The notes beneath the pieces were generated by a model that made no database searches, was not told the origin of the DNA, and saw nothing but the letters and a program-made list of their open reading frames with translations. The translations under genes were made by a program, and so were the position numbers. Of a DNA stretch of 64,000 nt, positions 3,907-30,795 are shown piece after piece. Every line of letters begins with the position of its first letter. Position 1 is the stretch's first letter. The stretch is from Trichosphaerium sp. ATCC 40318 (Eukaryota > Protista > Tubulinea), in assembly GCA_038496445.1 (NCBI GenBank), contig JALMLS010000621.1:112064-176063 (forward strand). The letters are read 5' to 3'.

Positions 3907-6900
3907 ATGTTTCAAAGCGAAGCTCCTATGCTTACACTGTTAGCAACGCTGTTAATTCTGTGTAGAGTTAACGCTCAAATAAGCGGTATAGTATACCGTG
4001 ACTATGATTTTGACGGCAGAAGAGACGCTCTAGAGCCAGGTATGTAAGGTAACAATAGGCTAATTAACTTTCCGGAGGTATCTCTATGGTGGATCTTGAC
4101 CTTTTCGACGGCAACAATATGAATGTTGGATCTGCTACAACCGATTCCAACGGCGCCTACAGCATTTCAGTTGTAGCTGGTAAACCCGTTTTGTCACGTG
4201 ACACCAAATATTTTTAACTTTGGTTAGGAGTGTACAGACTAGAAGTATCGAACAGTCCAGCACTGTTCACCCATTCCTCTTCAACGAACAATGACGGAGG
4301 ACCTGTTTTTTCAACAACACATGTATTTTCGGCTCCTACAACTAGTGCTGATATTCCTCTATCTGCACCTCATGACTATTGTGTTGGTGATATTGTAGAT
4401 GGAGTCAGAGCACAATTTGATGTCGTCACCACATGCTTTGTAGCAGGTTAGTTGAACTGTTCGCTTCTCGCAAAAAGTTCTAACAATTACTGGGTAGGTG
4501 ATCAAACTACTGCGGAGTCAACGATAGTTTTAAAACCAAACACTGCCGGCACAATGGACTTTTTTGATTTTGCAGCCGGTTCAGAAGATTTTACAACGGA
4601 TGTATGTACAGATGTACAGACAGGACCTGTTTGGGGGGTTGCCTATTCACGACTTACAAGGCAGTTATATCTAAGTAAGTCGCCACCATGCAGAATGATT
4701 ATTTGGGCTTATACTAAATAGGTTCGTTTCAAAAGACGCATGCTGGGTATACTGTTGGTCAGACACCATCCACCATTTATAGGCTTGACACTAGAGCCGG
4801 AGTAACATGTAACATTGTACAGAACATTGACATGGCAGCGTTTGGATTCCCGGCTACTGACTTGGCGCCGAACCAATTGCATAATGTCGCAGACTATTCA
4901 ATTGATTCAATTGCTATACCGCTTATTGGCAAGCATGGGTTCGGGGCTATGGATATAAGTGATATCGAAGACTTCCTTTACGTTGTAAACTTATTTTCCA
5001 GGACAGTTATTCGTATTGGCCTTGGTACGCAGCCTCACGGTTTTTTTTTTGGTGTTCTCAGCTTTCAAACAAAAACCCAAAGTCCGTATCTTGTAAATTT
5101 TAAATCACACTCTTTTTAGAAGTCTCTGCCATGCCTAGACTTATCGAAGCGAGTGATATCATCGCAAAAGCTATACCGGATCCAGGTACAAACAAAACCC
5201 CACATGTTAGCTCGCGCACCTTGATAAACACGTTTTAGGTGCATCATGTGTATTTGATATGGCAACGCCTGTTAACGTATTGAACTTGAATGTTCGCCCT
5301 TACGCCATTAAGTGCGTCTTTTATTTTTTTTTACTAACAACAATACCTTATAAACGCTCTAAAAGCACTACAAACCATGTTTGTTTGCTACCTGAAAACA
5401 TCAAGTTTTGTTCAAAAACAAAACATTTTGGCTAACAAAAGACCGTATTTAGATACAATGAGGGTGTCTTATACCTCGGTATGGTTTGTACTGCCGAAAC
5501 AACTAATTTGCGCTCTGACTTGAGGTACTACGTGTACACTACTCCAGCAGACGACTTTGGTGCGCCTGGGCCAGTAACTTGGACCAAGGTAAATTTTAAT
5601 CTTTTCTCTTCATTTTGAAGTTCGCTAAGCGTTTTAACATTAGATTGTGGACGAAGGAATGGACTACGATCGTCAACCTGCTCTGCAATGTGGTTCCTCA
5701 GGTATCCCAGCCCAGGAGCATATTCAATGGAATGCATGGACGGAAACTTTTTTAGCTCCTGAATGTTTCGAAGAAGGTACTGTATCTCTCCTTTTGGCTA
5801 TTAACACCTAGCTTTTTTTTTAATTTTATCACGTGACTTTTTTTTTTTTCAAATTTTTTCTCAACCTATGATTAGTGGCACATCCGCAACCTATACTAGC
5901 AGGCATTGAGTTTGATGAAACAGGGAACATGATTCTGGGATTTCAAGATAGATTTGGAAGTCAAGCAGGAGATTATAGTGTCGACGTAGTTGGCGATATT
6001 GGCGGGGACGCACTCTGTTTTTCATACGACAGTGGCAATGGTACTACACACATTTATTAGATCTGTTTGAATAATTTTTACCGTTGACGCGTTGTGTAGA
6101 CATTTGGATAAGAGAAAGTGGACTTGGTGGTCCCGCAACTTGCGGTAGTAACACAGCAAATATAGCAAGTGGTCTTGGACCTGATGGCGGCAGTGAATTT
6201 TTCTACGGTGACGTTTACACTGATTCTAATGGCGCCGGCTTTCATCAAGAAACTTTTCAAGGTGGCTTGGTAACTGTTCTTGGTGGGTATCTTTTTCACA
6301 ATTTTATTATTTTTCTTTTTTCAAGGCATCACCAATATTGGTTGATTTTTACTCTTTGATTTCTTCTTTCGTATTTTATTATTATTTACAATGAGTTTGG
6401 TATACATACATTATTACGACTTCTAAATTAAATCATATGCTGAGCCTTTTTTTTTTTCAATAATTATTTTCCAATAAAATCTGGTCTGATTGAGTATAGG
6501 AACTGGCGAGCTTATAATGCCAGCGATGGACCCTCTTGATGGAAATTCCGGTGCTTTCTCAGGTGGTATTACAAATCAGCAGTCCAGGTATTTTTATACA
6601 TGGTTGACTAGCTTGGATTAGACAGTTACTCTGTATCTGAAAAATAATTTTATTTACGTTTTAACTACAACACATCTACTCTGTATAGCCAGAATTTAAT
6701 TTTTCAGAGTAAACGTATAGGATCAATCAAAAACCAACCTTTATTTTTATCGAAATACAGAGTAAACTTACAGAATCAATCAGTATTTTCTCTTAATATT
6801 TTTGACAAAATTCAGGGATGGACAAAAAGTACTTTCCTATCTATTATATACAGGCGGCAATACTGGTATTTTTTTTGCGAAATCTACAGGTGTGGGGGAG

Positions 6901-9900
6901 GTAGAACCAATATGTGATCCTCCACCATCACAAATCGGCAACTACATTTGGATTGACACTGATTGTGATGGTATTCAAGATCCAAACGAGTCAGGTCCTG
7001 ATGGCGTCATTGTTACGTTAAATCGTAATGACGGTAGCCCATTAGTAACTTCAGTTACTTCGAATGGCGGGTGCGAACACTCTAAATATATTATTAAATA
7101 TGTCTCTTACTTTACACCAGCTACTTTGGATTGACATCTCCTGATCCAATATTTTCGCCTGTCAGTTGGACAATTACCGTGGATATGACACAAGCAAACT
7201 TACAAATGCCTGACGTTTCTAATTTTGTGTCAGCATTGAACGCTGGAACAAATGATCGTCATGATAACGATTTTGTATTAGGTGTCAATGCTGTAGCGTC
7301 CGTAGATGTTTTAGTACCTACAACAGGGTACAGAAATCACAACATTGATCTTGGGGTTTGTCATGGAATACCACCAACGACGTTGCCACCAACGACATCG
7401 CCACCAACTACAGAACCACCGACAACCGAGCCACCAACAACATCGCCACCGACTACAGAACCACCAACAACCGAACCACCAACTACTGCGCCGCCAACAA
7501 CTGAGCCACCAACTACTATGCCCCCAACCACAGAACCACCGACAACTATGGCACCAACACGTGCGTCTAAAAATAAAAATCAATATTGATTTTTTATCAA
7601 TTAAACAAAATACTTAGATCCGCCTGTACTCATTGGTGATTATGTGTTCCTTGATGTTAACAATAATGGCATACAAGGTACGCTACTTTAGGTCCAAGAC
7701 AACTAAAATATTAATAGATGCTGGTGATGAACCTATTCCTGGACGTATCGTTGTTATTATTGATCTGTTAGGTGTAGAAATTGAAAGAACTACAACAGAT
7801 ATGTCTGGCTTGTACTATCTGGATGATAATGCTCTTGATCCTCTTACTGAATACTCCGTGTGCATACCTGTTCTTGCTGGCGAGATTTTATCACCAACAA
7901 GAGTTGGCTCTGATATATCCATAGACTCTGATGGTACTCAAGGCAGCTACGACTTTGATGGCGATTCTACATCTGATTTCGCATCTTGTCGCGACATTCG
8001 CACTCCTGCCTTCAAAATCAGTGACTTCACACTTGATTTCGGTATTGTTCGACCTCAACAAGCTCTTGGAGATCAAGTATTTTTGGACGAAAATAGAAAC
8101 GGCATATTCGGTACATGCAATAAAACCAAAACACGTGATTAAAAGGATTGTTCTCACATTTTTCTTGATTTAGATATGGGTGACACACCAATTAACGGTG
8201 CAGATATTGTTTTGTTGGACATGAATGGTATGAGAGTAGCCATCACGTCTTCAGATCCAATGGGTATCTTTACTTTCGATACAATGGATGGCGTACTGCC
8301 TGACACCTCATACACCATTTGTGTTCGCATACGCATGTTCGATGAGCCAACTGCGATAAACGCTGGTGTAGACGATAACATCGACTCTGATGGCGTGTTG
8401 AGTATGGCTGACTTTACAACACCTCCTAATGGCATGACTGAACCGGCTTCATGTGTTGGTATTGTACGTGCTATTAAACATCAACTTTTCACTCACAAAA
8501 GTTGTTTAGATGTCTCCTGCTCTGGGTATTGACAATCGAACAATCGGATTTGGATTTATCATCATGCCAGTGGCTATTGGCAATTACGTGTTTTTTGATG
8601 TGAACGCAGACGGTCTCCAAGATGGCACAGATATTCCTGTTTCAATGAGAACTGTTGTCGTACTTCTACCTGGTGGCACTGAAGTATCAAGAACAACAAC
8701 TGATATATCCGGTGCATACTCATTTGCAACACCTTTAATAGAACCAGCAACAGATTATCTTGTTTGTGTACAACTCATCACAAACGAAGCTTCAACTTCA
8801 ACAACTGCGGGTATCGATTCCACCATCGACTCTGATGGCAGTGACTCCATGTTTGATTTTGATGGAGACATGATGGGTGATCCAGCATCTTGCACATTAA
8901 TTGTACGTTAATAGTTCATTTTCACTCAGTTCTAACAATACCCACAGAGATCACCAATACCAGGCCAGACTGATATTACGATCGATTTCGGTTTGTTGAC
9001 ATTAGACATCGAACTCGGTGATTATGTGTTTTTCGATACCAACAGAGATGGTATTCAAGGTAAACAGAAAAATAATTATTGTTATCAAAACAAAATAACA
9101 TGTGCTTAGATATGACTGATGTTCCAATCATTGGTGCCACTGTGGTGTTAATACAGGGTGGACTGGAAGTCAACCGCACTATAACAGACTCGGACGGGCT
9201 GTACTTATTTAACACAATGTCTGGTGTTGAAGCTAGCATGCCATATGTGATTTGCACTACGATTAGAGCTGATGAAGAACCCACCACTGCCAATCAAGGT
9301 CCCTCGGATATGCGTGATTCAGATGGATTCATTGACTCATATGACTTTGATAATGACATGGTGCTCAGACCTGCATCGTGCGCTAGTGTCGTAAGCTGTT
9401 TTATAAAACTGACTTTATTTGTATTAAGTATTTTGTCTTAGACTGCACCGTTATTAGACGAGTCCGATCTAACAATAGATTTTGGATTTGTTGCTCAAAC
9501 CATCACGATGGGTGATAGAGTCTTCTTTGACATCAATAACGATGGCATTCAAGGTACAATTAAAAATGCAATTTTGATTGAATGTTCTTTTTTATTTTTG
9601 TCACTTATGAACGTTTAGATTCCGGTGATGTTCCTGTTCAAACTCGCACTGTCGTTATATTTGAGACTGGCGGTAGCGGCCTTGAGATTGCTAGAACAAC
9701 TACAGACTCATCTGGATTGTTTACATTCGACACTTTTGATGGCATTAGTCCAAGCACACTTTATACCATATGTGTACAAATCGTATTGGGAGAGCTACCA
9801 ACAACAGCGAACCAAGGTTCTGATGACATGATTGATTCTGATGGTAGTTTATCATCCTTTGATTTTAACATGGACACAGTTCAAGAAGACGCCAGTTGTG

Positions 9901-12900
9901 TATCTGTTGTGCGTTGTTTTGAATTCCGCTCTTTATCCAATGCTGATTTTTTGTTCAAATTAGATGAGTCCTGTTCTTGGTACAACAAACTTGGACATTG
10001 ATTTTGGTCTTATCACCCCAGATCAATTTATTGGTGACTTTATTTTCACTGACGTAAACAGAGATGGTCTTCAAGGTATGTCTTGGAGCAAACCCCAACT
10101 TTCATTGATGTTTGTAACGTTGTTATCTTTAGATGGTGGAGACACACCTATAGCCATGAATCCTGTAGTGTTATTTGACAGTATGAGTGCGCGTGTTAGC
10201 AGTACAAATTCGAACAACCTTGGATTTTACATGTTTGGTACAATCGATGGATTGGATCCCAGCACATTGTACACTATCTGTACATTGATCCCAGATGTAC
10301 ACAACCCAGCAACAACTTCAGTGGGTTCAGACGGGACAATTGATTCCGATGGTGTTCTACGTATGGTTGATGTATCCATACCACCTGATGGCATGCCTGA
10401 TAGGGCTTCATGTCTTGATTTTGTACGTATTCGTTTATTTGTCATTTCTCGTTCATAACAGCTCATCCCCTTTTTTTAGACATCGCCATTCACTGGAGTT
10501 AACAACTTGAACTACGATTTCGGATTTGTAGAACAACCAAGTGTCATTGAAGGATTTGTATTTTTCGATGAAGACGGTGCTGCAATCCAAGATATGTTTG
10601 ACACACCTGTCATGATGAGACAGGTTGTATTGTTGTTTGGTGGGATGGAAGTAGCGAGAACCGATACTGACGGTTCTGGTATTTTCACATTCGACACAGA
10701 TACTGGTGTCATTGCGAACGAGATGTACGAGATATGTGTCTTATTGCTTCCAAGCGAACTTCCATCAAATGCAAATCAAGGACCGAGCGATGCTCGTGAC
10801 TCTGATGGATTATTGTCATCATATGATTTTACAGTTCCTCAAGATGCCACCCTGGAACCAGCTTCCTGTGCATCACTCGTACGTTTGTAGCACACGTTTG
10901 TTGATTGTTGATGTATTTAGACTGCTCCTGGACCCGCCATGACACATGATACAACTGACTTTGGTATCGCAAGACAAGATGTTGGTGACTTCATCTTCTT
11001 TGATGTGAATTCTGATGGTATCCAGCAAGGTAAACATCATTCCACCATACACATCTTTTCTTATTTTTCTCAGGATCCGATACTCCAATTCAAGGACAGA
11101 CGGTCGTCATCTTCCGTAGTGACGGAACTGAGCTTGCACGTACCGTGTCAGATATTGACGGACTGTACTCATTCAACCTGGCTGATGGTGTCATGCCAAA
11201 CACGCCTTACACCATTTGTGTTGCGATACGATTTGGTGAAGAACCAACACAAGCCAACCAAGGTCCAAGTGACGCTCAGGACTCTGATGGATCTCTTCAA
11301 GCGGATTTCTTTGATTTTGATGGCAATGGTGTACTTGATGATGCATCATGTGCCAACCTTGTACGAGTTTCTTACAGTTATAAATCTAAAATGAACTACC
11401 CTCCTGTAGATGTCAGCTGATTTGGGTATCACCGACTTCACAACTGATTTTGGATTTGTAAATATTGAAATTGTTACGATTGGAAACTTTGTGTTCCTTG
11501 ATAGCAATAGAGATGGTCTTCAAGGTAACGTTGAAGATAAACTTGGTTTTCTTTATTTGTTTAATTTCTGATTAGATGCCATGGATGTCGCTATTCAAGG
11601 TGCTGATGTTGTTATAATCGATATGGCAGATGCTGTAGTTGCGAGAACCATCACAGATGTGAATGGCAATTACGACTTTAATACATTCGATGGCATTCAA
11701 CCAAACGCAGACTACATCATTTGTGTTTCAATCAGGGCTGGAGAGCAACCCACATTGAATGATATTGGCATGGATGATACAAGTGACTCAGATGGTGTCC
11801 TTGATGCTTTCGACTTTGATGGAGACATGATCGATGAACCTGCCTCTTGCAATCCTGTTGTAAGTTGTTTTTTCGATATGAAACACGTTATTTACTTGTT
11901 TCTAATCCATCCTAAATAGACAACTCCAAGCCTCAGTAGTTCTGATCTATCATTTGACTTTGGATTTATTCCACAAACAATATCAATTGGTGACTTTGTT
12001 TTCTTTGATAACAACGAAGACGGCCTTCAAGGTTTGTATTTTGTTTGTCTTATGTTTAAACAATATTGCATTTGCTTATTTCTGTTTGGTAGATCCTGGA
12101 GATGTTGGGGTACAGATGAGACAGGTTGTTATTTTAAATACAAACGACAGAAGTCTCGTATCTACAACGACTTCGAGGATTACAGGATCTTATGAATTCA
12201 ATACAATTGATGACAACATTGTACCAAACACGAATTACATTATCTGTGTTCCATTGTTGGTCGGCGAACTAGCTTCTCCAAGTGGTGCTGGAATGGATCC
12301 AATTGATGATTCTAATGGAGTGCCAAGTTCATTTGATTTTGATGGTGACTCTGTTGCAGAACCAGCCTCATGTGCTTCAGTCGTATGTCATTTTTTGGTT
12401 TTGTTTTGATTACTTTTCTTACAACTTTGTAGACAAGTCCAGCGCTTGGTGATACTGACATAACCATTGATTTGGGTATCACCACACCAACGCAGTTTGT
12501 TGGTAACTTTATATTTTTTGATGCGAACGGTAATGGCATTCAAGGTACAACTTAACTGAAAGCCTTTAGTTTCATTCAAATTCATTGTACGCCCCTTTAT
12601 AACTCCTTTACCAAGATGCTGTTGATATGCCTCTCGCCAACTACGACGTGATACTATACTCTAGTGCAGGGATGGAAATATTGAGAAAGACAACTGACAT
12701 GAACGGTATTTACACGTTCGATACAAGTGAGGGAATAGCACCAGATACTCAATACACCATTTGCACTCCACTTCCAACTGACCAAGATCCTTCAACTGCA
12801 AACCAAGGTGCTGATGATACCATTGACTCTGATGGTGTTATACGTACATTGGATTTATCGAATCCACCAGACATGATGCTAGATCGTGCATCTTGCATTG

Positions 12901-18900: not shown

Positions 18901-21900
18901 CTCATTATTCCTCGATAACAACAGGAACGGCATTCAAGGTAAGTACCAATGAGGCTCGAAGAAAAATATATTGATTCGGCTTTAATCGCTTTATATAGAT
19001 GGTAGCGACGATCCAATTCCAAATGCAATCGTTGTTTTGTTGACCCGTTCTGGTGTCGAAGTTGCTCGCAAGATCACAACTGCAACTGGAAATTACATCT
19101 TTGATAATTCGGACAGCCTTCAACCTTCGAATAACTACATCATCTGTTCTTCGGTTCGCAATGGAGAACAACCTACCACTGCACTTCAAGGTTCTGACAC
19201 AACAATTGATTCTGATGGCACGCTTGACACGTTTGATTTTGACGGAGACAATTCTCTCGATCGTGCTTCTTGCGTTGACATCACATCACCATCTGGAGGA
19301 AACACCGATTTGACAATAGACTTTGGATTTATTCCTCAGACCATTGCTGTTGGAGATTCTGTTTTCTTTGACAACAACGAGAATGGCATTCAAGGTAACC
19401 TCTCCGTGTGCTTTACTCAAACTAATGTATTCTCAAAGATGCTGGAGACTTACCGTCTGGAACTCGCACTATTGTGATCATACGACAAAGCGATAATGCT
19501 GAAGTATCTCGCACTGTGACAGACTCAATGGGTCAATACAGTTTTGATACATTCGATGGTATTCTTCCAAACACAAACTACAGAATCTGTATCCCTCTCA
19601 ATGTTGGTGAACTGCCTTCGATAACAGGTCAAGGTGACGCTACAACAGATTCAAATGGTGTTTCAAGCTCATACGACTTTGACATACCTCTCAATGGTCC
19701 AGATCCAGCTTCATGTGCTTCAATTGTAAGTAACTAGAAGTGTTCAGGTTTTTTGTTAGAAATACTGACACAATGTAGACCACACCTGCTCTTGGCATCA
19801 TTGATAACACCGTGGACTTTGGTGTTGCAACTCCAGATCAATTCATTGGAGATTTTGTGTTTTTTGACGCAAATGGCAATGGCATTCAAGGTAACTATTA
19901 CACTTTTCATACGCAGTAACCAATCTCTTACCGCCACTAGATATGAATGATACACCACTTGGTGGCATACTTGTTGTGTTGTTCGATGGAAGTGGCAACT
20001 ACATTACTGAAACAAACAGTGATGGCACAGGCGCTTATTCATTCAGCACGACAGAGGGAATACTACCATCAACGCCATACATGATTTGTGTTGAAGTACC
20101 ACTTCAAAACAATCCAACAGCCACTGGTCAAGGTGGAGACAACACCATCGACTCTGATGGAAGAATAACTGCCATTGATCTCACATCACCTCCTGACAGT
20201 ACCCTCGAGCGATCTTCTTGCTTTTCCTTTGTACGTTACCTCACTTTAGACGCATTATTTCAAATATTCAATATGTAACATGTGTCACTAGACAGCACCA
20301 AGCACGGGAGTGTCAAACACTAACATTGATTTTGGATTTGTGACTCAACCAATCACAATCGAAACATTTGTATTCTCTGATGTCAACGATGATGGACGTC
20401 AAGATGCTGGTGACTCTCCAATACCATCCAGAATTGTTGTGATCACCCTTCCTGATGGTGTCACTGAGGTTACACGTACCACTACATCAAGTGGAGGTAT
20501 TGCCACATTCACCACATCTGATGGCATACAACACGACACACCATACATTCTTTGCGTTGAAATAACGATCACAGAAGATTCAACCACACTCAATACTGGA
20601 TCAGATGATCTCGATTCAGATGGTGATTCTCGTACTTTTGACTTTAACATGGATGGTTCAAACGATCCAGCTTCATGTGTTAACATTGTACGTGTACTTA
20701 GATGCTAAATATTCAATCTATACTTACCTAAGTAATCCAGGTATCACCATCACCTGGTATGACACTTGACACCTTTGACTTTGGTCTCGTTACTCCAGAA
20801 GTGACAATTGGAGACTTTGTATTCTTTGATGTCAACACAAACGGTATTCAAGGTAAAGGTGACTTGTTAAACACATTTTACTAAGTCAGGATAGAACCAT
20901 CGGATATGCCTATTACATCTCATCCAGTTGTATTACTGCAAAGTGATGGTACTGAACTCGTTCGTACAATGACAGATGCGATGGGTATCTACTCATTCAC
21001 AACTGCTGATGGTGTTCTTCCAAACACAGCTTACATTCTGTGTTCTCCAATCAGATCAGGAGAAGAAGTCACTTCTCCAAATCAAGGAGCCAATGATGAT
21101 AATGACTCTGATGGTAATCTCATCGTTTCATTTTTCGACTTTGATGGAGATATGGCACTTGATGATGCTTCATGCATCACAACGGTACCCTTTATTTTTC
21201 CTCATATTTTAGTTCTAACAAGTGTTCTTGTAGACATCACCTGCTCTTGGTGTTTCTGATACATCTCATGACTTTGGTTTTGTAAATATCTTGACAGTAT
21301 CGATTGGTGACTTATTATTCCTCGATAACAACAGGAATGGTATTCAAGGTACTCGCAAAACACAAACTGAGTGACGTTAATATTGCTATAGATGGTGGTG
21401 ATGACCCTATTTCAAATGTTGAAGTTGTTCTATTGACACGTTCTGGTGTTGAAATCGCTCGCAAGATCACCACCGGCACAGGCAACTACGTTTTTGATAC
21501 ATTTGACAATGTTCAACCTTCAACAGACTACACTATTTGCACTGCAATCCGAAACGGAGAACAAGTCTCTATGATCAATACAGGATTAGATGATACCATA
21601 GATTCTGATGGAACAACCAGTATTTTCGATTTTGATGGCGATTCAATTGTCGAACCGGCATCTTGTGTTGACATCACATCGCCTGCTCTCGGTACTGTAA
21701 ATTTAGATGTAGATTTCGGATTTGTTCCTCAAACCATTGTTGTTGGAGATTCTGTTTTCTTTGACAACAACGAGAATGGCATTCAAGGTACGCTTCGAAT
21801 ACCTTTTACAGTTTTCAAGAGCTCAATATATTTTTAAGATGCTGGAGACTTACCGTCTGGAACTCGCACTATTGTGATCATACGACAAAGCGATAATGCT

Positions 21901-24900
21901 GAAGTATCTCGCACTGTGACAGACTCAATGGGTCAATACAGTTTCGATACATTCGATGGTATTCTTCCAAACACAAACTACAGAATCTGTATCCCTCTCA
22001 ATGTTGGTGAACTGCCTTCGATGACAGGTCAAGGTGACGCTACAACAGATTCAAATGGTGTTTCAAGCTCATACGACTTTGACATACCTCTCAATGGTCC
22101 AGATCCAGCTTCATGTGCTTCAATTGTAAGTGACAATACTGTTTAAGTTACAAATGCTAACACTATAGACCACACCTGCTCTTGGCATTATTGATAACAC
22201 CGTGGACTTTGGTGTTGCAACTCCAGATCAATTCATTGGAGATTTCGTGTTTTTTGATGCAAATGGCAATGGCATTCAAGGTAAGAATACACAACATATC
22301 CTTATCACTAAAATAAATAGATGCCTCTGATATGCCTCTTGATGGAATATCTGTTGTGCTCTTTGACAACACAGACATGCCAATTAATCATATTACAACA
22401 AATGCAATGGGAGAGTACCTATTTGGTACTCAAAATGGCGTTCTACCGTCGACAACATACACAATTTGTGCTCAAATACCAGATGGCAACGATCCAACAT
22501 TACCAAATCAAACAACCGAAGATCTTGACTCTGACGGTGTCTTGCGTAACATCGACTTGTCGGCAATACCCGATGGCATTACAGAACGTGGATCTTGCGT
22601 TGCCTTTGTACGTAACTTTATTTATGTTTTGGCTCTTTACTCACGTGTTTGTTTAGACATCACCAAGTGTTGGTGTATCCAACTTAAATTACGATTTCGG
22701 GTTTAGAAACCAACCTGTGACTCTTGTCATTACTGCATTTAACGATGATAACAACAACAATATTTTTGATCTTAGCGATGCTCCAATCCAGAACAGAAAT
22801 GTTGTAATAACTGACTCTTCCGGTACAGTTGTCTCAAGGACAACAACAGACTCTTCAGGTGGTGCCACATTCGATACTTCAACAGATGGCATTCAACCAG
22901 GCACATCATACACCATTTGTATTGAAGTGCTCCCTACTGAGCTTCTTGTGAACCCTGATGCCGGTCCTGACACTGTTGATTCTGATGGAGATTCAAGAAC
23001 TTTCGATTTCAACGTTCCTCTTGATGGTACACTTGAAACAGCTTCTTGTACAGACATTATCTCCCCTGGACCTGGCATGACTGATAACACAGTTGGATTT
23101 GGTACAATAGTCGGTATCACCACTCTTGGTGATCACGTGTTCTCTGACGACAATTCAAACGGTATTCAAGGTACTACACAACATCCAGTTCCTTCCTTTC
23201 CTGACTGTACTTTGTAGATCCATCCGAAAACGGTATTACCAACCAAGACGTTGTGTTATTGCTTCCAGATGGTACTTTCGTTGCTAGCACAAGAACTGAT
23301 GGCAATGGCGACTTTTCGTTTACAACAACAGACGGTGTATTGCCAGATACAATGTACCTCATTTGTGTGGCTATACCACCAAGTACAGAACCAAGTGTTG
23401 CCAACCTCGGAGCAAATGAGACAACAGATTCCGACGGTACTCAGAACGATAACATTGCAGACTTTAACAATGACAATATTAACGATCCGGCATCTTGTGC
23501 TCAAATAGTACGCTTTGTTTTTTTATGAAGCATCTTTTTTGATTTAATTCAATAGCAATCACCTCCTCTTGGTGATACAAACAACGATGTTGATTTTGGA
23601 TTTTCAACAGTTCAAACAATAATGATTGGAGATTTTGTGTTTGTTGACGCCAACCAAGACGGCATTCAAGGTATGACATCTTTCTTCAAACTTTCTTAAA
23701 CATAAAATTTCTTACGTTTTACTAGACGGTAGCGATTTGCCTATCGTTGGTGCCACAGTAGTTTTGTTAAATCTTGCTGGTAACGAAGTCTCAAGAAAGA
23801 TAACAGACGGCAGTGGTCGTTACATGTTCGAGACTTCAGACAATGTTCAACCAAGTACAACATACAGAATTTGTTCATCAATCCGACCAGGAGAGCAAGT
23901 CACCGCTGATAACCAAGGAGACGATTCTCAAGATTCAGACGGAACACTAAGTTTGTTTGACTTTGATGGAGACTCAGTTCCTGAACCGGCGTCTTGCACA
24001 ATTATCGTACGGTTTTGATTTGAATCACTTTTTTGTTTGGTTGTATTGTTAAGTTTTTTTTTTCTTTAGATTTCTCCAGTTCTCGGAAATACAGATGTCA
24101 GTGTTGATTTTGGATTCATACCTCAAACTGTTGAAATTGGAGATCGAGTATTCTTTGATACAGATAACGATGGCACTCAAAGTACTATTGCAAACAAAAA
24201 ATTTGTCAAGCACTTAATTAACTTATTTTCAAGGTCCTGGCGATGTGCTTTTAGATTCACGCCTGGTAATTATCGCACTTGCTTCAACACGTACAGAAGT
24301 CGGTCGTGTGACTACTGGCAGCGCAGGAGAATACATTCTCGACTCAACAAATGGCATTCAACCAAACACACAGTACATTGTGTGTACTCCTCTTCAACCG
24401 GGTGAAATATCAGCACAAGCAAATCAAGGTGTCAACGATGCCATTGATTTTGATGGTCAAGACAGCTCGTTTGACTTTAATGGAGACTCAATTGAAGAAG
24501 ATGCTTCTTGTGCTGTGATTGTACGTTTCAAAAACACAACAACATGCAATTGTTCTAAGATGTTTGTTTAGACCTCACCATCACTTGGATCTACGGACCT
24601 CACAGTAGATTTCGGAATAATCACTCCACCTTTGTTTATTGGTGATTATGTCTTTAATGACGTTAACAGAGATGGCACTCAAGGTACAACTCTAGAAACG
24701 AAAGAGTTTAATTTAACTTTGCGCACAGATTCTGGAGATACAGGCGTAGCAAACCATCCAGTTGTCATTCTACAATCAGATGGCACACACTTGGCTACAA
24801 CAACCACTGACTCAAGTGGTATCTATACGTTTGGAACAAGTGATGGAGTCCTTCCACAAACGTTTTACATCATTTGTACTCCAATTCCAGCAGGCAACGA

Positions 24901-27900
24901 TCCAACAACGCCTGATCAAGTCAATGGAGCTATTGATTCTGATGGTATCGAAAGATTGATTAACTTATCTCCATCTGGTGGAACACCTGAACGTGCATCC
25001 TGTGTTGATATCGTACGTACTTTAAAACATATTCCTGGCTCTGTTAATGATTCTATTTTTAGACATCTCCTATCACAGGAGCAACAGATAATGACATTGA
25101 CTTTGGATTTGTGACTCAACCAATCACGATCGATACATCCGTGTTCCTTGATGTCAATGAAGACGGACTCCAAGACGGTGGAGATTCTGTTGTACCTTCA
25201 AGAACAGTCGTTATCACTCTCCGTGATGGTACTGAAGTTCTACGCACCACGACTTCCGGTAGTGGTATTGCGACATTTACCACGTCAGAAGGCATCCTAC
25301 CAAATACCGAATATGCCCTCTATGTTGAATTGATCGATTCAGAAATTCCAACAAGCTCAAATGTTGGTGTAGATGATACCATAGACTCTGACGGAATTCT
25401 CGGTGCTTTTGACTTTAGCGGCGATGGCGTTGATGATCGGGCTTCGTGCGCCTTTATTGTAAGTTATACCACCTCATCTATTCCTTTGTATTAACAAAAC
25501 TACGTTAGGATCCCATTCAACCAGGACAAACTGTTGATACAACTGATATTGGTCTAAGAGTTCAAACTGTTGAAGTCGGAGACGTGGTTTTCTTGGATAC
25601 TTTTGCGGATGGAATTCAATCTGGTACGCCTTACAACCACAAAAAGTACTTGTGTATCAAGCTAACAGCCTTTACAACAGATAGATTACCTGTTAGATAT
25701 GAAGACGTGGTTGTTGTCCTTCTAAGACGCGATCGAAGTGAAGTTGCTAGAACGACTACTGACGCAAGTGGAGAATACACATTCACACAAACAGATGGTC
25801 TATTGCCTTCAAGTCCTTACACAGTATGTGTTCAACAACCTCCTCAAACCGCCCTATCACCAGCGAATGTTGCATCTGTTGGTGACGCATTTGATTCTGA
25901 TGGTACAACTGGTGCTTATGACTTTGATGGTGATGGCACACTTGACAGTGCATCATGTGCTGACATTGTACGACACTTCTAAACTCTTTGACAAAGTAAA
26001 GTTGTAACACGTGTTTTCTAGGATTCGCCACCTGGAGGATCATCTGATAGGACCATAGATTTCGGATTCTTGACAGATCCTCCTATTGAAATTGGAGATA
26101 GTGTTACATTCGATATCAATAATGATGGCCTACAAGATGGTGGAGACGAACCTGTTTCTTCCCGAACAGTCGTTATTATCTATCAAGGAACAGAAGTATC
26201 AAGAACAAATACTGATGTAAACGGCAATTATCGTTTTGTTTCCACTGACGGTATCATTCCCAACGAACCTTACACAATATGTGTCGAGCTTCTACCGAGT
26301 GAAACTGTAGCACCAGCGAACCAAGGCAGCGACGATACAATAGACTTTGATGCATCATTGAATACTTTCGATTTCTCACAACCTCCAGATTCTATCAACG
26401 AAAACGCAGCGTGCTTTGACATTACAACACCAGTCTCTGGTCCTATGAGAATAGATGATTCTAACGATATTGGTATACTTCAATCGTTGATAGGTGACAC
26501 AGTATTCTATGACAGAAACTACGACGGTGCTCAAGGTACTCATTTCTTACATGCAAAAACTTTTTTTCACATCAATGGTTTAACCAGTTTTGTTAGATCT
26601 TGGAGATGGAACCTTTTCTCCTTTGCAAGTCGTTTTACTACACCAAGATATGAGCCTTTTGGAACGAACAACGACAACATTAGACGGCCAATACCATTTT
26701 ACCAGCGAAGACATGTTCTTACCTTTAACACCATACATCATTTGTGTACAACAACCTCCTGGCACTGTACCAACGACTCAAAATGCTATTGGTGATGATA
26801 CTCTCGATTCTGATGGATCTCTTGATGCTTATGATTTTAACGGGGATTCTATTGCTGATCCCGCCTCATGCGCTAGCATTGTACGTTACAACATAGTCCT
26901 TAAACAAAACCAAAAGTTAATAACCACTAACAAATATGCAGGTATCTCCACAACTAGGATCTATTGACCTCACACACGATTTTGGTTTTGTAACTGATCC
27001 TCCAATTGAAATTGGAGATACAGTCCTTTTTGATATAAACTCTGATGGCATTCAAGGTAAACGCGCTCGTTTTGGTATGTTGTTACAATCATTTCTCTAA
27101 TTTTGTTTTCAATAGATTCTGGAGATGTACCTGTACCTTCTCGTTTGGTAGTTATCGCCTTGACGAACGGTACAGAAGCCAGTCGTACAATGACGGATAC
27201 CAATGGCATGTACACTTTTGTGTCATCAGATGGCATCGATCCTTTGACAGAGTACATAATTTGTGTTGAACTCGAACAAGATGAGACAGTGTCTCCATCC
27301 AATGTCGACTACGATGCCACTCTTTCAACTTTCAATTTCGGTAGCACACCTGCACCTGCAGCTTGTACAACCATCACAACGCCATTGTCAGGCTTAGACT
27401 TAAGCACTACAGTGGATATCGGAATCATTCATCCACATGTCCCTATGATCATTGGAGATCGCGTATTCACAGATGATAGTGCCGACGGCATACAAGGTAA
27501 CAGCTTCATTTAACAAACTAAGTGCTTTCTACTAAATACTGTTTCGCAGATCCTGGAGAAGATGGACCAAGTGGTGTTTTCGTTGTTGTATTTGATACTT
27601 CTGGTGTCATTGTTACAACAACTACAACCGACACTATGGGCAGATACAGTATCCCTTCACCACCTCTTTCTCGTAATACAAACTACACTGTTTGCGCTGA
27701 TATCTCTGGTGTTTTGGGTGGACAATTCTTTCCTTTGATTCCTCCTGCAGGACAAGGTTCAGACACATCTCTGGATTCAGATGGTGTGCTGTCATTTGAC
27801 TTTGACCTTGACGGTGATGGCACAAACGATCGCGCTTCTTGTGCTCATGTTACCACATCACTTGATGGAACACCAATCTCTACTATTGATTTTGCAGTGA

Positions 27901-30185
27901 TCATTATTCCATCTACAATTGGTAACCTTCTTTTCTTTGACACAAACGGAGACGGCGTTCAAGGTACACTTACTACCTAGTCACACCCCTTCGCTAATCT
28001 TTTTTTTCAACTAGATCCTTCAGAACCGCCAATTGGTAATGCAACCATTCTTTTATTCCTTAATGGAACACTTGTGGACTCAACAGTTAGCGATCAAGAT
28101 GGTGGCTACAACTTCACCCAACTGATCCCTGATGCCACTTACGATGTTTGTGTACCTTTTGGAAGTCCTCCTTTGCTCTTCCCATCTCCAACAAATGCAC
28201 CTGCACCTGTTGGATCAGACTCTGATGGAGTACCAATGTACGGGCAAACACAATAACTATGCTGTTGTACTTATCATTTTTAAGGATGATCGATGTTGAT
28301 GGTGATGGCATCCTTGAAACAGATGCAGCTTGTGCATCGGTTGTACCTGGATCAAACGAAACTGATATATCGACAGTTGTAGACTTTGGGTTCCTACCAG
28401 ACTCTGTTGAACTTGGAGACTCAATCTTTTGGGATATCAATGGCAATGGTATACAAGGTACAAGACCATTGATTGAACGACAATTTCTTACTGTTTGATG
28501 TTTAAGACCCTGAAGATACCGGTATTCCTGATATTCAAATCGTTGTTCTTGAAAACAACATGTTCTATGCTGTTACTACAACTACAAGTACGCTTGCTAG
28601 ATAATACCATGACCACCAAGTACTCATATAAACTTTCTAGCCGGTGGTAACTTTAACTTTACAACACCTGACCATGGCATCTTCCCAAATACTGAGTACA
28701 CCATTTGTGTGAATGTCACGTACGCCCTTTTTTCTTGATGTCAGTGCCTCATATCTTTCTAGTGATACAGGATTTCAACCTACACTCTCGGGTCAAGGTG
28801 GGGATCCTACCACGGATTCTGATGGAGGTCCTATTCAATCTATTGACGTCTTCGGTGATGGCATTTTATCTGAAGTGTCTTGTGCTACATTGACAACAAG
28901 AGCACTTCCTTTTGAAGACAACACAATTGATTTTGGCCTATTCCTTGTTCCTGACATGGCACGTATGCCTGAAATCGTTAGTCCAACAGGTGGTATTGTT
29001 GTTATCTTACAGGTACGCAACATCGACGCACCCTAAAAGCAACATAGTACTCATTTTTGTTCTTTTTAGGATGGCATTACGTTGAATAAGCAACTTGTTC
29101 CTGACGGTGTCATTCAAGTCAGTGTCGACACTGTAAATACAGACGAAGTTACTTTCGAATTCTCTCTTGATGGATCTTCATTCACAGACACTTCTGGCCC
29201 TATCTTCACGTCTCAAAATGTCACTTTATTAACAGGTACCTTTAACAACACAGCTAGTAAAAGCAAATGGCTCACACATGTTTTAGAGCAATTCATCAAC
29301 ATCACAATAACATTGCGTAATACCACGACCAACAGAGAAACCGTATTTAGCTTCACATTCCGTTGTGTAAACCCAGGTATCTCTGGTGACCCTCACTTTG
29401 TTGGATTCAATGGACAGAAATTTGGTACGCTTTTTATCAACCTCATGCTTTACTTCTTGAACACTCGCTGATGTACCTCATAGATTTCCATGCAAAGCCA
29501 GACATATACTATGCCATCATTAGCGACAACAATGTGGCTGTAAACTCTTTATTTGTACACGCTGATCTCCGCGAAAAGAGTAACAAAACATACATGGGTC
29601 AGATCGGTATTATCCTTGGAAATGACAGATTGTTTGTATCATGTGATCGTAATAATCTGTCTCATCGTATTGAATTCAATGGTGGACCACTTGCATCAGG
29701 GGCGAGAAAGACACTGAGCTTGGGAAAACTGAAAAGATCAAAAGCAAACAATGATCGCATTCAAGTCATCACTCAGCACTACAGAATCTCTGTCAGATTC
29801 TCATCTTCATCACATAGTACCTGCCATCTGAATATGAGAACCAAATATAACGGCGATAAACGTGCTCTAAAAGACCAACCACACGGTACGTTTACAGCAA
29901 CTGCCTCTTATAGAATCTCCGTTTTGTTTCTGACTTCTTGATGTAGGTGTTCTTGGACAAACAGCTTGGAAAGAAGTTGTAGAGATAAATCATCATGGTA
30001 TAAATGGAGAAGGTGTTATTGATGGTAAATGGAAAGACTACGTACTTCGTAACATATGGGACACCAACTTCAAATTTTCAAAGTTCAAGCATATCGATTA
30101 TGCAAGACTCAACGCCAAAAGCAAAAAGCCGTTCAAGCTTCCTGACTATGACTCAACCACCTCGCTAGACGGTTTTGTAGAGTAA
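3907..30185 (+). CDS. Giant secreted repeat protein (about 7000 aa by estimate, about 90 or more introns): signal peptide, bacterial-type adhesin head, PT linker, about 44 tandem SdrD B-like domains, C-terminal GDPH/Root_cap-VWD-like domain
   Basis: Signal peptide MLTLLATLLILCRVNA|QISG. A chain of GT-AG introns links the exons in frame. Recurring motif IGDFVFFDxNxDGIQD...T.TD..G.Y.F...Y.IC...DSDG...ASC...DFG. Stop TAA at 30183-30185. One frameshift at ~16109. Confidence 0.9.
3976..7370 (+). other. N-terminal head of the giant protein, similar to bacterial 'SdrD B-like domain-containing' surface proteins
   Basis: ISGIVYRDYDFDGRRD, GPVWGVAY, GKHGFGAMDIS, LYLGMVCTAE, HPQPILAGIEFDETGNMILGFQDRFGSQ, EFFYGD, HQETFQGG, FAKSTGVGEVEPICDPPPSQIGNYIWIDTDCDGIQDPNE. 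This motif order is recalled from Bacteroidota/Chloroflexota/Actinomycetota proteins. Confidence 0.75.
7371..7560 (+). repeat. 15-nt coding tandem repeat, 12 x PPTT(E/S/A/M/L), mucin-like linker
   Basis: Read directly as ccaccaacNacNNNN units. Confidence 0.95.
7618..28950 (+). repeat. Array of about 44 SdrD B-like domains (~135 aa; ~480 nt including two introns) with a ~2.4 kb 5-domain super-period
   Basis: Counted 44 starts of the (I/V/L)GDxVFxDxNxDG(I/L)Q type from 7630 to 28457. The variant lacking the GIQ intron recurs at ~10545, 13030, 15497, 17933, 20357, 22720 and 25128. Confidence 0.9.
29370..30185 (+). other. C-terminal GDPH-containing VWD/Root_cap-like domain of the giant protein
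   Basis: ISGDPHFVGFNGQKFDFH...YAIISDNNVAVNSLF...TYMGQIGI...CHLN...PHGVLGQT...GVIDGKWKDY...FKFSKF. No TM helix or GPI signal follows. Confidence 0.75.
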
Positions 30186-30795
30186 ATAACAACCCACCGT
30201 GATGATAACACGTGATAGACAGCTAGAAAATAAAAGTTGTCATTTTTAAAATCATACGCTGTAGCAAGCTTTTTTGTTTTTCTTCGTGTTCAAAGTACTA
30301 TTCTATACACTTACATCCTCAAGATGAAAATAACAGTTCACCTAACTTGTATACTCTAACAATATTTTATAATAACAGTCAACAAGGGCTAAGGAGAAAT
30401 AGTACAAAGCAACTTTACAATGGCAAGTAGACTCACATGAAAAATAACGTGCAACATTTATGGATTAAGGCTTTTTATTAACAAAAGGCGATACGCTACA
30501 GAATAACCTGTCACGCACACACACAATACGATCAAGGAAACAGAAAACACCTAAAAATTAAAAAAAAGTAATCCAAAAAAAAAAAAAACTAGGTCTAGCC
30601 CTTTTGGTTCGTCCCACAATCCAAAACCAACAAGGGCACCCGTTAAAAACATAAATATAGAGAGAAATGAGGGACGACCTTTGGTTCATACCACAACCCA
30701 AAACCAAAGATCCCACCTACAATTAAAAAAAACTCTCTGAAAAAAAACTCCTTTGCCAAAAACAATGGCATCTCCAAGAGATTCTACACCGACCT

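What the first reader, a model, noticed from the sequence alone, without database searches (positions are those of the whole stretch)
3907..30185. A bacterial-type SdrD-B adhesin domesticated and expanded into a ~7000-aa intron-rich eukaryotic protein
Seen: signal peptide, head domain, mucin linker, about 44 tandem domains and about 90 or more spliceosomal introns. The introns exclude bacterial contamination. Known: SdrD B-type domains with DxNxDG Ca loops, and this head architecture, are typical of bacterial surface proteins. Inference: horizontal acquisition, intron gain, tandem expansion and fusion to a eukaryotic GDPH module gave a very long, acidic, Ca-stiffened fibre. Possible roles are adhesion, prey capture, glycocalyx or test cement. 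This is the best candidate for an undescribed system in the window.
Basis: partly seen in the sequence, partly recalled or inferred. Interest (0 to 1): 0.88.

Follow-up and report, generated by a model that had tools for sequence, protein, structure and literature searches.

The report
Giant amoeba fibre from bacterial adhesin parts
A single-celled eukaryote carries a transcribed, intron-packed gene for a secreted protein of about 7,000 residues. Its binding head and 44-unit calcium-loop stalk are of a type otherwise found on bacterial surfaces, so bacterial adhesin parts appear to have been rebuilt into a eukaryotic surface fibre.

Summary
There is one + strand gene, ATG 3907 to TAA 30183-30185, with 91 exons and 90-91 GT-AG introns (median 52 nt), encoding 6,998 aa.

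Layout:
- signal peptide;
- a ~600-aa head;
- one SdrD_B domain;
- a PPTT(E/S/A/M) linker;
- 44 tandem ~131-aa SdrD_B units (Pfam PF17210, above threshold on every piece tested);
- a C-terminal GDPH module.

Spliced contigs from four studies confirm 11 predicted introns and the stop codon.

The spliced head aligns end to end (26-32% identity, E to 1e-74) with a module found in at least 581 bacterial loci (Cytophagales, Saprospiraceae, Chloroflexota). A bacterial proxy folds as an SdrD_B-like sandwich plus a six-bladed beta-propeller.

Two introns sit at the same two positions in most units. The array therefore grew inside the eukaryote after it gained introns.

Bacterial origin rests on distribution, because the tree places no donor.

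Caveats:
- a 1-nt deletion creates an in-frame TGA at 16108-16110, with no reads laid there;
- the VWD-like nature of the GDPH end rests on a motif and a language-model match;
- PF17210 proteins were noted in passing in a thraustochytrid.

The scan found paralogues of this gene before, on other DNA of this genome (s1-409501, s1-378512, s1-397353).

The parts
3907..30185 (+). Whole gene: 91 exons, 90-91 GT-AG introns, 6,998-aa secreted protein
   Evidence: model; head collinear with bacterial proteins; 11 introns and the stop seen in spliced contigs
3907..3975 (+). Signal peptide (aa 1-23, predicted cut after VNA)
   Evidence: Direct reading; the only N-terminal hydrophobic segment
3979..4307 (+). 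N-terminal SdrD_B/CarboxypepD_reg-like sandwich of the head module (aa 25-105; 2 introns)
   Evidence: Own HMM hit at aa 22-81; equivalent part of bacterial relatives hits CarboxypepD_reg/SdrD; proxy model
4308..6912 (+). Head core (aa ~106-625; 11 exons): six-bladed beta-propeller with large inserts. No Pfam or NCBIfam family.
   Evidence: End-to-end alignment to bacterial modules, E to 1e-74; proxy AF2 model pLDDT 87; VIA Z 24.5 to YWTD propellers; no Pfam hit
6913..7367 (+). Head-proximal SdrD_B domain (aa 626-760)
   Evidence: Pfam SdrD_B E 7e-11; own HMM
7371..7559 (+). Pro/Thr linker, about 12 x PPTT(E/S/A/M); probable O-glycosylated mucin-like spacer
   Evidence: Direct reading; weak Extensin_1 match
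7620..28928 (+). Stalk: 44 tandem ~131-aa SdrD_B units (aa 826-6656). D 13.2%, Lys 0.1%, pI 4.05; 2 Cys in 42 of 43 full units; 72 introns, mostly at two conserved positions.
13443..23094 (+). Central zone of a 5-unit super-repeat. Exon pairs are up to 99.3% identical while their flanking introns are diverged.
15984..16110 (+). Unit 18: intron 15984-16025, then a 1-nt deletion relative to paralogous units gives an in-frame TGA at 16108-16110
   Evidence: no reads were laid here
28929..29384 (+). ~115-aa beta-rich, N-glycosylation-sequon-rich segment before GDPH (aa 6657-6772). It holds Cys 8 residues upstream of GDPH.
   Evidence: no Pfam hit
29385..29396 (+). GDPH motif (aa 6773-6776); candidate Asp-Pro self-cleavage site
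   Evidence: Direct reading; motif biology from PMC10880436
29397..30185 (+). C-terminal 222 aa after GDPH (basic, pI ~8.6 for aa 6657-end). VWD/Root_cap-like by language-model features. No TM or GPI tail.
   Evidence: Atlas 0.94 to VWD, Root_cap and RGM clusters; exons 97-100% identical in the contigs of organisms B and C

Best explanation
This is one expressed nuclear gene of a protist. Earlier notes of the scan call the organism an amoeba; I could not name it. The gene encodes a secreted fibrillar-adhesin-like protein of about 743 kDa.

Shown.
- A signal peptide leads into a ~600-aa head module of a family otherwise seen only in bacteria, here Cytophagales, Saprospiraceae and Chloroflexota.
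- In a bacterial proxy this module folds as an SdrD_B-like sandwich plus a six-bladed beta-propeller.
- Next come one SdrD_B domain, a Pro/Thr linker and 44 tandem SdrD_B units, which keep the EF-hand-like D-x-N-x-D-G-x-Q-D loop and further acidic loops.
- The C-terminal end carries a GDPH motif.

Inferred history.
- A head-plus-SdrD_B cassette came from a bacterium long ago. The head is about 30% identical to all bacterial relatives, and the gene's G+C matches its surroundings.
- It acquired introns.
- The SdrD_B unit, already carrying two introns, was then amplified by tandem duplication, partly as a 5-unit super-repeat that is still being homogenised.
- Each unit gained a Cys pair and an extra acidic FDFDGD insert, and lost almost all lysines.
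- The bacterial anchoring region is absent, and a eukaryotic VWD-type GDPH domain stands at the C-terminus.

Inferred mechanism.
- Ca2+ bound in the loops keeps the acidic units folded and the array extended, giving a rod of the order of 0.2 micrometre. That figure assumes 4-5 nm per unit, which is my assumption.
- The rod holds the beta-propeller binding head away from the cell.
- The GDPH domain fastens or assembles the other end in the cell coat.
- The ligand is unknown. Substrate or prey adhesion is the most likely role.
For: Gene model and splicing.
- Searches give the model.
- 11 introns and the stop are confirmed in spliced contigs of 4 runs from 4 studies.
- The 13 head exons splice into a sequence collinear with intronless bacterial proteins over aa 25-640, 26-32% identity, E to 1e-74.

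SdrD_B identity.
- Pfam hits are above threshold.
- Sequence match to solved S. aureus SdrD, E 1.3e-5.
- All nearest Atlas clusters are bacterial SdrD_B at 0.96.

Head family is bacterial.
- Of 45 library hits I looked up 20.
- At least 581 loci in bacterial species genomes, including cultured Spirosoma, Fibrella and Runella.
- Head fold: AF2 pLDDT 87, pTM 0.87; Z 24.5 to YWTD propellers.

Expansion after intron gain.
- A phase-1 intron after DGIQ and a phase-0 intron after ASCxx recur in most of the 44 units.
- Super-repeat at a lag of 5 units.

Stalk chemistry.
- Loop 1 is kept in 38 of 43 units and DSDG in 42 of 43.
- 42 of 43 units have two Cys.
- Only 8 Lys occur in 5,831 aa; pI is 4.05.
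- B repeats of Sdr proteins carry functional Ca2+ EF-hand loops and act as spacers (PMC3775735).

GDPH end.
- The motif plus Atlas VWD, Root_cap and RGM clusters at 0.94.
- GDPH lies between the first two strands of VWD domains and self-cleaves at Asp-Pro (PMC10880436).
- The same architecture was noted in paralogues of this genome.
Against: - An in-frame TGA at 16108-16110 would end the protein at about aa 3,120 if it is real.
- No read or contig was laid on the 5' 20 kb, so a single 21-kb mRNA is inferred from frame continuity only.
- The head tree gives no supported placement (end branch 1.97, near the midpoint), so neither donor nor direction is shown by phylogeny.
- Eukaryotes are poorly represented in the libraries searched, and this genome's own proteins are absent from them.
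- PF17210 proteins were reported as numerous in a thraustochytrid transcriptome (PMC8917795).
- Pfam does not recognise VWD or Root_cap in the C-terminal exon pieces, and the fold attempt failed.
- Ca2+ binding, rod shape, cleavage, location and ligand are all untested.
Confidence: 0.72

Rival explanations
1. The gene is, in this strain, a recently broken gene, or it makes only the N-terminal ~3,100 residues. On this reading the TGA at 16108-16110 is real, and the downstream 3,900 codons and the GDPH domain are no longer translated from this copy.
For: A 1-nt deletion relative to three paralogous units puts TGA in frame. Several paralogues exist in the genome and could cover the function.
Against: No other defect occurs in about 21 kb of CDS. 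All other 43 units are full length. Downstream exons are spliced and present in cDNA-like contigs at 99-100% identity. The lost base is the C of a CpG, so an assembly or base-calling error is possible; that cause is my guess and untested. A GT..AG pair (15994-16106) could also bypass the defect in frame.
Confidence: 0.15
2. There was no bacterium-to-eukaryote transfer. SdrD_B arrays and this head would then be an old, vertically inherited, patchily retained eukaryotic family, or the transfer went from eukaryote to bacteria.
For: The head tree does not nest the eukaryotic sequence inside bacteria. PF17210 proteins are reported in a thraustochytrid transcriptome (PMC8917795). Protist genomes are thinly sampled in the libraries used.
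Against: The head occurs in at least 581 loci across several bacterial phyla and is often duplicated within one protein. None of the 20 of 45 hits looked up in 1.84 billion representatives was eukaryotic. All nearest Atlas clusters of the stalk unit are bacterial. The unit's conserved introns show the long array is a secondary, lineage-specific build-up.
Confidence: 0.1
3. The molecule is the same but the job differs. It would not be an adhesin but a bulk structural or ion-handling matrix protein, for example a Ca2+-binding scaffold or cement of a cyst wall, test or glycocalyx, with the head acting in self-assembly rather than in ligand capture.
For: The stalk has extreme acidity (13% Asp) and several hundred potential Ca2+ sites. 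It has almost no Lys and one disulfide pair per unit, which suits a protease-rich outside world. The family has at least four large genes. VWD-type ends are typical of gel- or matrix-forming proteins (PMC10880436).
Against: The head-plus-stalk layout is the hallmark of fibrillar adhesins, in which the stalk projects a binding domain (PMC9210967). Beta-propellers of this class are usually ligand-binding, though a fold shows no function. Nothing here speaks for mineral or wall association.
Confidence: 0.25

Closest known systems
Bacterial 'SdrD B-like domain-containing' giant surface proteins of Cytophagales, Saprospiraceae and Chloroflexota (e.g. MFN8488963.1 Caldilineaceae, MCY7351045.1 Cytophagaceae)
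   Same: They share the same ~600-aa head module (SdrD_B-like sandwich plus six-bladed propeller), alignable end to end, followed directly by SdrD_B domains.
   Different: The bacterial proteins have no introns. Their head module is often repeated 2-3 times per protein. They carry only a few SdrD_B domains, mixed with DUF11, GEVED and P_proprotein domains. They lack the Cys pair, the FDFDGD insert and any GDPH end. Identity to the amoeba head is only about 30%.
Staphylococcus aureus SdrD and the other Sdr MSCRAMM adhesins
   Same: The B-repeat domain family (PF17210) is shared, with its EF-hand-like Ca2+ loop, and the repeats are used as a spacer between the binding region and the anchor (PMC3775735).
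   Different: SdrD has 5 B repeats, an N2N3 IgG-like A domain, a Ser-Asp repeat and an LPXTG sortase anchor. Here there are 44 units, a propeller head, a Pro/Thr linker and a GDPH domain. The NCBIfam MSCRAMM_SdrD model is matched only locally and far below its cut-off, even by the bacterial relatives.
Fibrillar adhesins as a class (Monzon et al., PMC9210967)
   Same: The architecture is shared: a distal binding domain on a stalk of tandem beta-sandwich domains, with SdrD_B listed as a stalk domain.
   Different: The class is defined for bacteria with cell-wall or outer-membrane anchors. This one is a spliced eukaryotic gene with a eukaryotic-type C-terminal module.
VWD-domain/GDPH proteins (FCGBP, MUC2/MUC5AC, RGM, ITIH heavy chains, plant Root_cap proteins)
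   Same: The GDPH motif is followed by F-x-x-F-[DN]-G-x-x-F. A Cys lies shortly upstream. The nearest language-model clusters are VWD, Root_cap and RGM. GDPH sits between the first two strands and self-cleaves (PMC10880436).
   Different: No Pfam VWD or Root_cap hit was obtained on the exon pieces. There are no C8/TIL partners and only 3 Cys. Neither the fold nor cleavage was verified.
Paralogous giant SdrD_B genes of the same genome (scan notes s1-409501, s1-378512, s1-397353)
   Same: They share the same layout: head, linker, 49-62 SdrD_B units and a GDPH end. One of them ends only about 16 kb upstream of this gene.
   Different: They are different loci with different unit numbers. I could not read their sequences, so identity to this gene is unknown.

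Membership tests
SdrD_B domain family (Pfam PF17210) | Match to the Pfam model above its gathering score | tested here: met
   All 8 pieces tested that contain a domain score 29.7-64.9 bits against a cut-off of 29.7, with E from 8e-7 to 9e-18.
SdrD_B domain family (Pfam PF17210) | Sequence homology to a solved SdrD B domain | tested here: met
   phmmer against PDB: 10ps_A SdrD, E 1.3e-5. The alignment covers the DLG-Y...GDYVWEDTNKNGIQD region.
SdrD_B domain family (Pfam PF17210) | EF-hand-like Ca2+ loop (D-x-N-x-D-G-x-x-D) and actual Ca2+ binding | tested here: inconclusive
   The loop is present in 38 of 43 units in relaxed form and 18 of 43 in strict form. DSDG is present in 42 of 43. Metal binding cannot be tested with these tools.
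Sdr/MSCRAMM adhesins (SdrC/D/E) | N2N3 IgG-like A domain, Ser-Asp repeat region and LPXTG anchor | tested here: not met
   The head is a propeller module, the linker is PPTTx and the C-terminus is ...SLDGFVE with no LPXTG. NCBIfam MSCRAMM models are far below cut-off on the bacterial relatives.
Bacterial head-module family (unnamed; consensus GxTWGLAY...KRHxGxGP...YPQPxLSDIEFD) | End-to-end collinear alignment of the ~600-aa module, directly followed by an SdrD_B domain | tested here: met
   aa 25-640 aligns with 45 library proteins and 80 genomic loci at 26-32% identity, E to 1e-74. SdrD_B follows at aa 626-760.
Six-bladed YWTD/TolB-like beta-propeller fold | Predicted structure superposes on solved propellers | tested here: inconclusive
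   This is met for the bacterial proxy P0025:959-1565 (pLDDT 87; Z 24.5, rmsd 2.6 over 257 residues to nidogen 1npe). The amoeba head itself could not be submitted because it is spliced, so the fold is carried over through about 31% identity.
Fibrillar adhesins (bacterial class) | Binding domain plus tandem stalk domains plus bacterial surface anchor, in a bacterium | tested here: not met
   Head and stalk are present, but the gene is eukaryotic (introns) and has no bacterial anchor. It works like one but is not a member by definition.
VWD/GDPH self-cleaving domains (PF00094; related Root_cap PF06830, ITI_HC_C PF06668, RGM) | GDPH motif in the turn after the first strand | tested here: met
   GISGDPHFVGFNGQKFDFH at aa 6770-6788. 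Strand placement was not verified.
VWD/GDPH self-cleaving domains (PF00094; related Root_cap PF06830, ITI_HC_C PF06668, RGM) | Profile or fold match to the domain | tested here: inconclusive
   There was no Pfam hit on the three exon pieces, across which the domain is split, and no PDB sequence hit. The AF2 model of the main exon had pLDDT 37. Atlas features gave 0.94 to VWD clusters, with 161 shared features, below the 170 typical of same-family hits.
VWD/GDPH self-cleaving domains (PF00094; related Root_cap PF06830, ITI_HC_C PF06668, RGM) | Asp-Pro autocleavage | not testable with these tools
   This needs recombinant protein and mass spectrometry.

The most novel reading that the evidence does not exclude
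The GDPH domain may be the functional replacement of the bacterial cell-wall anchor. Self-cleavage at Asp6774-Pro6775 would leave the 6,750-residue fibre with a reactive C-terminal Asp. That Asp would become ester-linked to a glycan of the amoeba's coat, as in ITIH heavy chains (that chemistry is from my own knowledge, not from a paper read here). Alternatively it would stay tied by the upstream Cys to a coat-bound 224-aa fragment. Either way this would be a eukaryotic, enzyme-free counterpart of sortase anchoring for a horizontally acquired adhesin. It would be used by a whole gene family that is kept uniform by exon-limited gene conversion.
Probability: 0.15. Interest if true: 0.8.

Novelty: new variant of a known kind. 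Interest (0 to 1): 0.62.

Why it matters
If the reading holds, a eukaryote took more than a single enzyme from bacteria. It took a whole structural design, binding head plus Ca2+-loop stalk, and re-engineered it. The changes were about 90 introns, a nine-fold longer stalk than S. aureus SdrD, disulfides, near-total loss of lysine, a mucin-like hinge and a eukaryotic self-cleaving end.

That makes it a clear natural example of domain-level domestication after interdomain transfer.

It also points to what amoebae may use to hold on to surfaces or prey, a topic with few known molecules.

The repeat array is a useful system for studying concerted evolution. Exons up to 99% identical sit between diverged introns.

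In the paper library searched I found no description of a eukaryotic SdrD_B protein, only a passing domain count in a thraustochytrid. The scan itself had already met paralogues in this genome.

Tried and rejected
- My first automatic exon chain skipped five head exons and stopped at 29471. I rebuilt the head and C-terminus by hand from splice sites and checked them against bacterial homologues and spliced contigs. The junction 6282/6500 remains ambiguous (6286/6495 is the alternative).
- The search for homologous proteins found nothing three times: stalk unit, C-terminal exon and the neighbouring kinase exon. This is expected from its length window and word index, and says nothing about kin.
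- Metagenome scans with the C-terminal exon and with an alignment of stalk exons found no relative. One alignment was too variable to search with.
- The PDB sequence search with the C-terminal exon gave no hit even at E 10.
- The AlphaFold model of the C-terminal exon without an alignment had pLDDT 36.8 and was unusable, so I ran no fold search on it.
- The head tree did not identify a donor: the amoeba sits on a long branch with no starred clade.
- Bacterial contamination is rejected on introns, spliced contigs and G+C equal to the flanks.
- 'Several small genes' is rejected as unlikely. There is no stop, start context or signal peptide inside, apart from the single TGA.
- Membership in the Sdr MSCRAMM family is rejected (see membership tests).
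- Intron families ('introners') as the source of the unit introns: random intron pairs average 55% identity with no outstanding family, so I did not pursue it.

Full report
**1. What is there**

The window is about 40% G+C throughout, with no compositional break at the gene. Between 3.9 and 30.2 kb the + strand holds a dense chain of open segments, separated by short stretches that begin GT and end AG.

I chained the exons by dynamic programming. I then curated the head and the C-terminus by hand.

Resulting model:
- 91 exons and 90 introns (median 52.5 nt, range 34-228).
- CDS from ATG 3907 to TAA 30183-30185, encoding 6,998 aa (about 743 kDa, pI 4.05).
- Donors are mostly GTACG(T/C); 68 of 90 acceptors are TAG.
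- One further in-frame intron (24684-24728) was left in by the model, and one acceptor should be 18475 rather than 18463. The true intron count is therefore about 91.

**2. The introns and the transcript are real**

Contigs of four public runs from four studies were laid on 24600-30400.

- The contigs skip exactly the predicted introns 25013-25062, 25968-26021, 27964-28014, 28458-28506, 28588-28640, 28720-28762, 29013-29069, 29236-29286, 29425-29483 and 29886-29946. They skip 28238-28284 approximately.
- One 2,008-nt contig (run X2, organism B) joins eight exons. It matches the window up to 30186, one base past the stop codon, and then runs on in unlike sequence.
- Contigs of organism A are 99-100% identical to the window. 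Those of organisms B and C are 82-100% identical, and most alike in the C-terminal exons.
- The gene is therefore transcribed and spliced, and relatives with the same exon structure exist in at least two other coded organisms.

As independent support, the 13 head exons, once spliced, give a sequence that aligns collinearly with intronless bacterial proteins.

No reads were laid on the first 20 kb. A single 21-kb mRNA is inferred from unbroken frame continuity only.

**3. Anatomy**

Residue numbers are from the model; genomic coordinates are in the parts list.

- Signal peptide, aa 1-23. There is no other clearly hydrophobic segment and no GPI-like tail.
- Head, aa 25 to about 625.
- One SdrD_B domain, aa 626-760 (Pfam E 7e-11).
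- A linker of about 12 PPTT(E/S/A/M) pentapeptides, aa 762-824.
- Forty-four consecutive ~131-aa units, aa 826-6656, found with an HMM built from the units themselves.
- A ~115-aa segment, then GDPH at aa 6773-6776, then 222 more residues.

Pfam SdrD_B (PF17210) is matched above its gathering score on every stalk piece tested. phmmer finds solved S. aureus SdrD at E 1.3e-5. The ten nearest Atlas clusters are all bacterial SdrD_B clusters at 0.96. No unit is found elsewhere in the window or on the other strand.

**4. Stalk chemistry**

The unit consensus is DFGF....IGDfVFfDvN.DGIQD.GD.PI....VVL...dGtEVaRTtTD..G.YtFdT.DGilPnT.YtICV.....E.P...NQG.DD.iDSDG....FDFdGD...D.ASCa.ITSP.lG..D.

- The EF-hand-like loop is kept in 38 of 43 full units (18 in strict form) and DSDG in 42 of 43.
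- 42 of 43 units have exactly two Cys.
- The 5,831-aa stalk has 13.2% Asp and only 8 Lys.
- Bacterial SdrD_B domains from the head-bearing relatives align only over unit positions 1 to about 102. They lack the two Cys and the FDFDGD...ASC insert.
- In Sdr proteins each B repeat carries a Ca2+-binding EF-hand loop that is functional in SdrD, and the repeats are thought to act as spacers (PMC3775735).
- Ca2+-dependent stiffening here is therefore a reasonable inference, not a result.

**5. The head**

Pfam and NCBIfam see nothing in its central ~500 aa.

- One head exon (4724-5023, 100 aa) was searched against 1.84 billion representatives. It found 45 proteins at E below 1e-3, the best at 5.8e-12.
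- I looked up 20 of them. All 13 that carry a name are bacterial genome records: Caldilineaceae and Caldilinea, other Chloroflexota, Cytophagaceae, and Bacteroidia/Bacteroidota.
- The whole spliced head (aa 25-640) aligns end to end with all of them at 26-31% identity, E down to 1e-74. In many bacterial proteins the module occurs two or three times.
- A pattern scan of one genome per bacterial species found at least 581 encoding loci, including cultured Spirosoma, Fibrella, Runella, Rudanella and Arsenicibacter. It also found Saprospiraceae, Chitinophagales, Anaerolineales and a few Acidobacteriota, Actinomycetota and Proteobacteria.
- The amoeba head is 29-32% identical to each of the best loci, with no favourite.
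- An AlphaFold model of the closest bacterial module, built with 45 aligned modules, is confident (pLDDT 87, pTM 0.87).
- The model consists of an SdrD_B-like sandwich (Foldseek hits to SdrD structures) and a six-bladed beta-propeller with large inserts. The propeller gives Z 24.5, rmsd 2.6 Å over 257 residues to the nidogen YWTD propeller, followed by LRP6, LDLR, TolB and Kelch.
- A fold is not a function, but propellers of this kind are typical ligand-binding modules.
- The amoeba head itself could not be folded, because spliced sequences have no reference.

**6. The C-terminal end**

The sequence ...FTFRCVNPGISGDPHFVGFNGQKFDFHAKPDIYYAIIS... ...CHLNMRTKYNGDKRALKDQPHGVLGQT... reads like a GDPH-type domain.

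- Atlas language-model features of the main exon point to eukaryotic clusters: VWD (0.94), a diatom 'VWFD' cluster, Root_cap (0.91), ITI_HC_C (0.86) and RGM (0.77).
- Pfam, the PDB sequence search and a single-sequence fold gave nothing usable.
- The same paper says that in some proteins a disulfide keeps the first strand attached after cleavage.
- It also notes that ITIH3, ITIH5 and ITIH6 have the motif in a VWD-like sandwich that is not annotated as such.
- Here a Cys lies 8 residues before GDPH and two more Cys lie downstream.
- None of the bacterial relatives examined has such an end. They carry DUF11, GEVED, P_proprotein and more SdrD_B domains.

**7. How the array was built**

Most units carry the same two introns: phase 1 after DGIQ, inside the Ca loop, and phase 0 after ASCxx. 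Nine units lack the first, about seven lack the second, and two have none.

Identical positions and phases in dozens of units mean that a unit already holding both introns was amplified. Most of the array therefore arose in the eukaryote.

In the centre, identity peaks at a lag of five units, up to 98% at the protein level.

**8. A blemish**

In unit 18 the proper intron is 15984-16025. Further on, GATTCGATG of the sister units reads GATTGATG, which puts TGA in frame at 16108-16110.

Everything downstream is intact and is seen spliced in RNA-like contigs. I therefore favour an assembly or base-calling error, or a very recent lesion. I could not test this.

**9. Origin**

The maximum-likelihood tree of the amoeba head with 45 bacterial modules leaves it on a long branch (1.97) next to the midpoint, in no supported clade.

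The case for bacterium-to-eukaryote transfer therefore rests on three things:
- distribution: hundreds of bacterial loci in several phyla, against one protist lineage;
- the secondary nature of the long array;
- the eukaryotic-type parts at the linker and the C-terminus.

Identity of about 30% and host-like G+C indicate an old event.

PF17210 proteins were mentioned as numerous in a thraustochytrid transcriptome (PMC8917795). SdrD_B is therefore not unique to this eukaryote, and wider protist sampling could change the picture.

**10. Comparison and novelty**

In design this is a fibrillar adhesin, that is, a stalk projecting a binding domain (PMC9210967). It is not a member of that bacterial class. 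It is also not an Sdr MSCRAMM, since it has no N2N3 A domain, no SD repeat and no LPXTG.

Literature searches for SdrD or PF17210 together with eukaryote, amoeba or transfer terms found no description of such a protein.

Within this scan, paralogues were already reported:
- one ending about 16 kb upstream of this gene (s1-409501: about 7,900 aa, 49 units);
- two on other pieces (s1-378512: 62 units; s1-397353).

This gene is thus one member of a family of at least four. I rate it a new variant of a known kind, of solid but not exceptional interest.

Noticed in passing
window 13443-23094, e.g. 19439-19725 vs 21839-22125: Exons of sister units are up to 99.3% identical (2 differences in 287 nt; third-codon-position divergence 2%). 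The introns on either side differ in length (44 vs 51 nt, 53 vs 43 nt) and are only 64-65% alike, against 55% mean and 64% at the 95th percentile for random intron pairs. Identity starts and stops at the splice sites. This points to exon-limited homogenisation (gene conversion stopped by diverged introns), not simple recent duplication. It is the same pattern as scan note s1-406649.
   Followed up: partly
window 15984-16110: A single-base deletion relative to sister units creates an in-frame TGA at 16108-16110 in an otherwise intact 21-kb CDS. The lost base is the C of a CpG. It could be an assembly error or a fresh lesion.
   Followed up: partly
window 3907-30185, all introns: The 5' splice sites are unusual. 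GTACG(T/C/A/G) accounts for 38 of 90 donors while the common GTAAGT accounts for only 6. Acceptors are TAG in 68 of 90. Introns cluster tightly around 50 nt.
   Followed up: no
window 7620-28928: The stalk is almost free of lysine (8 Lys in 5,831 residues; 35 of 43 units have none) while Arg is 2.6%. This may be an adaptation against trypsin-like proteases or against Lys-directed cross-linking.
   Followed up: no
window 18430-18475: Two in-frame acceptors lie 12 nt apart (18463 and 18475) at the first intron of unit 24. The downstream one fits the unit consensus. This may be an alternative 3' splice site.
   Followed up: no
window 52758-53999 (+): A 413-aa intron-free ORF is made of about ten copies of a ~38-aa helical repeat (...ARYQEQLAAEE.A...LK.RIAANK...). 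It lies in a stretch with strong AT skew (0.34). It is probably a coiled-coil protein.
   Followed up: no
window 63414-63636: Short tandem arrays of CACGTTTTGG(G) units (periods 11, 35 and 46) lie near the window end.
   Followed up: no
window 34400-36300 (+): A chain of Thr/Val/Ser-rich open segments may be another secreted or surface protein gene downstream of the giant gene.
   Followed up: no
bacterial proteins P0001, P0003, P0006, P0011, P0014: In bacteria the ~600-aa head module is itself tandemly or dispersedly repeated up to three times within one giant protein. No Pfam or NCBIfam model covers its propeller core although it occurs in at least 581 species genomes. It is a candidate for a new domain family.
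   Followed up: partly
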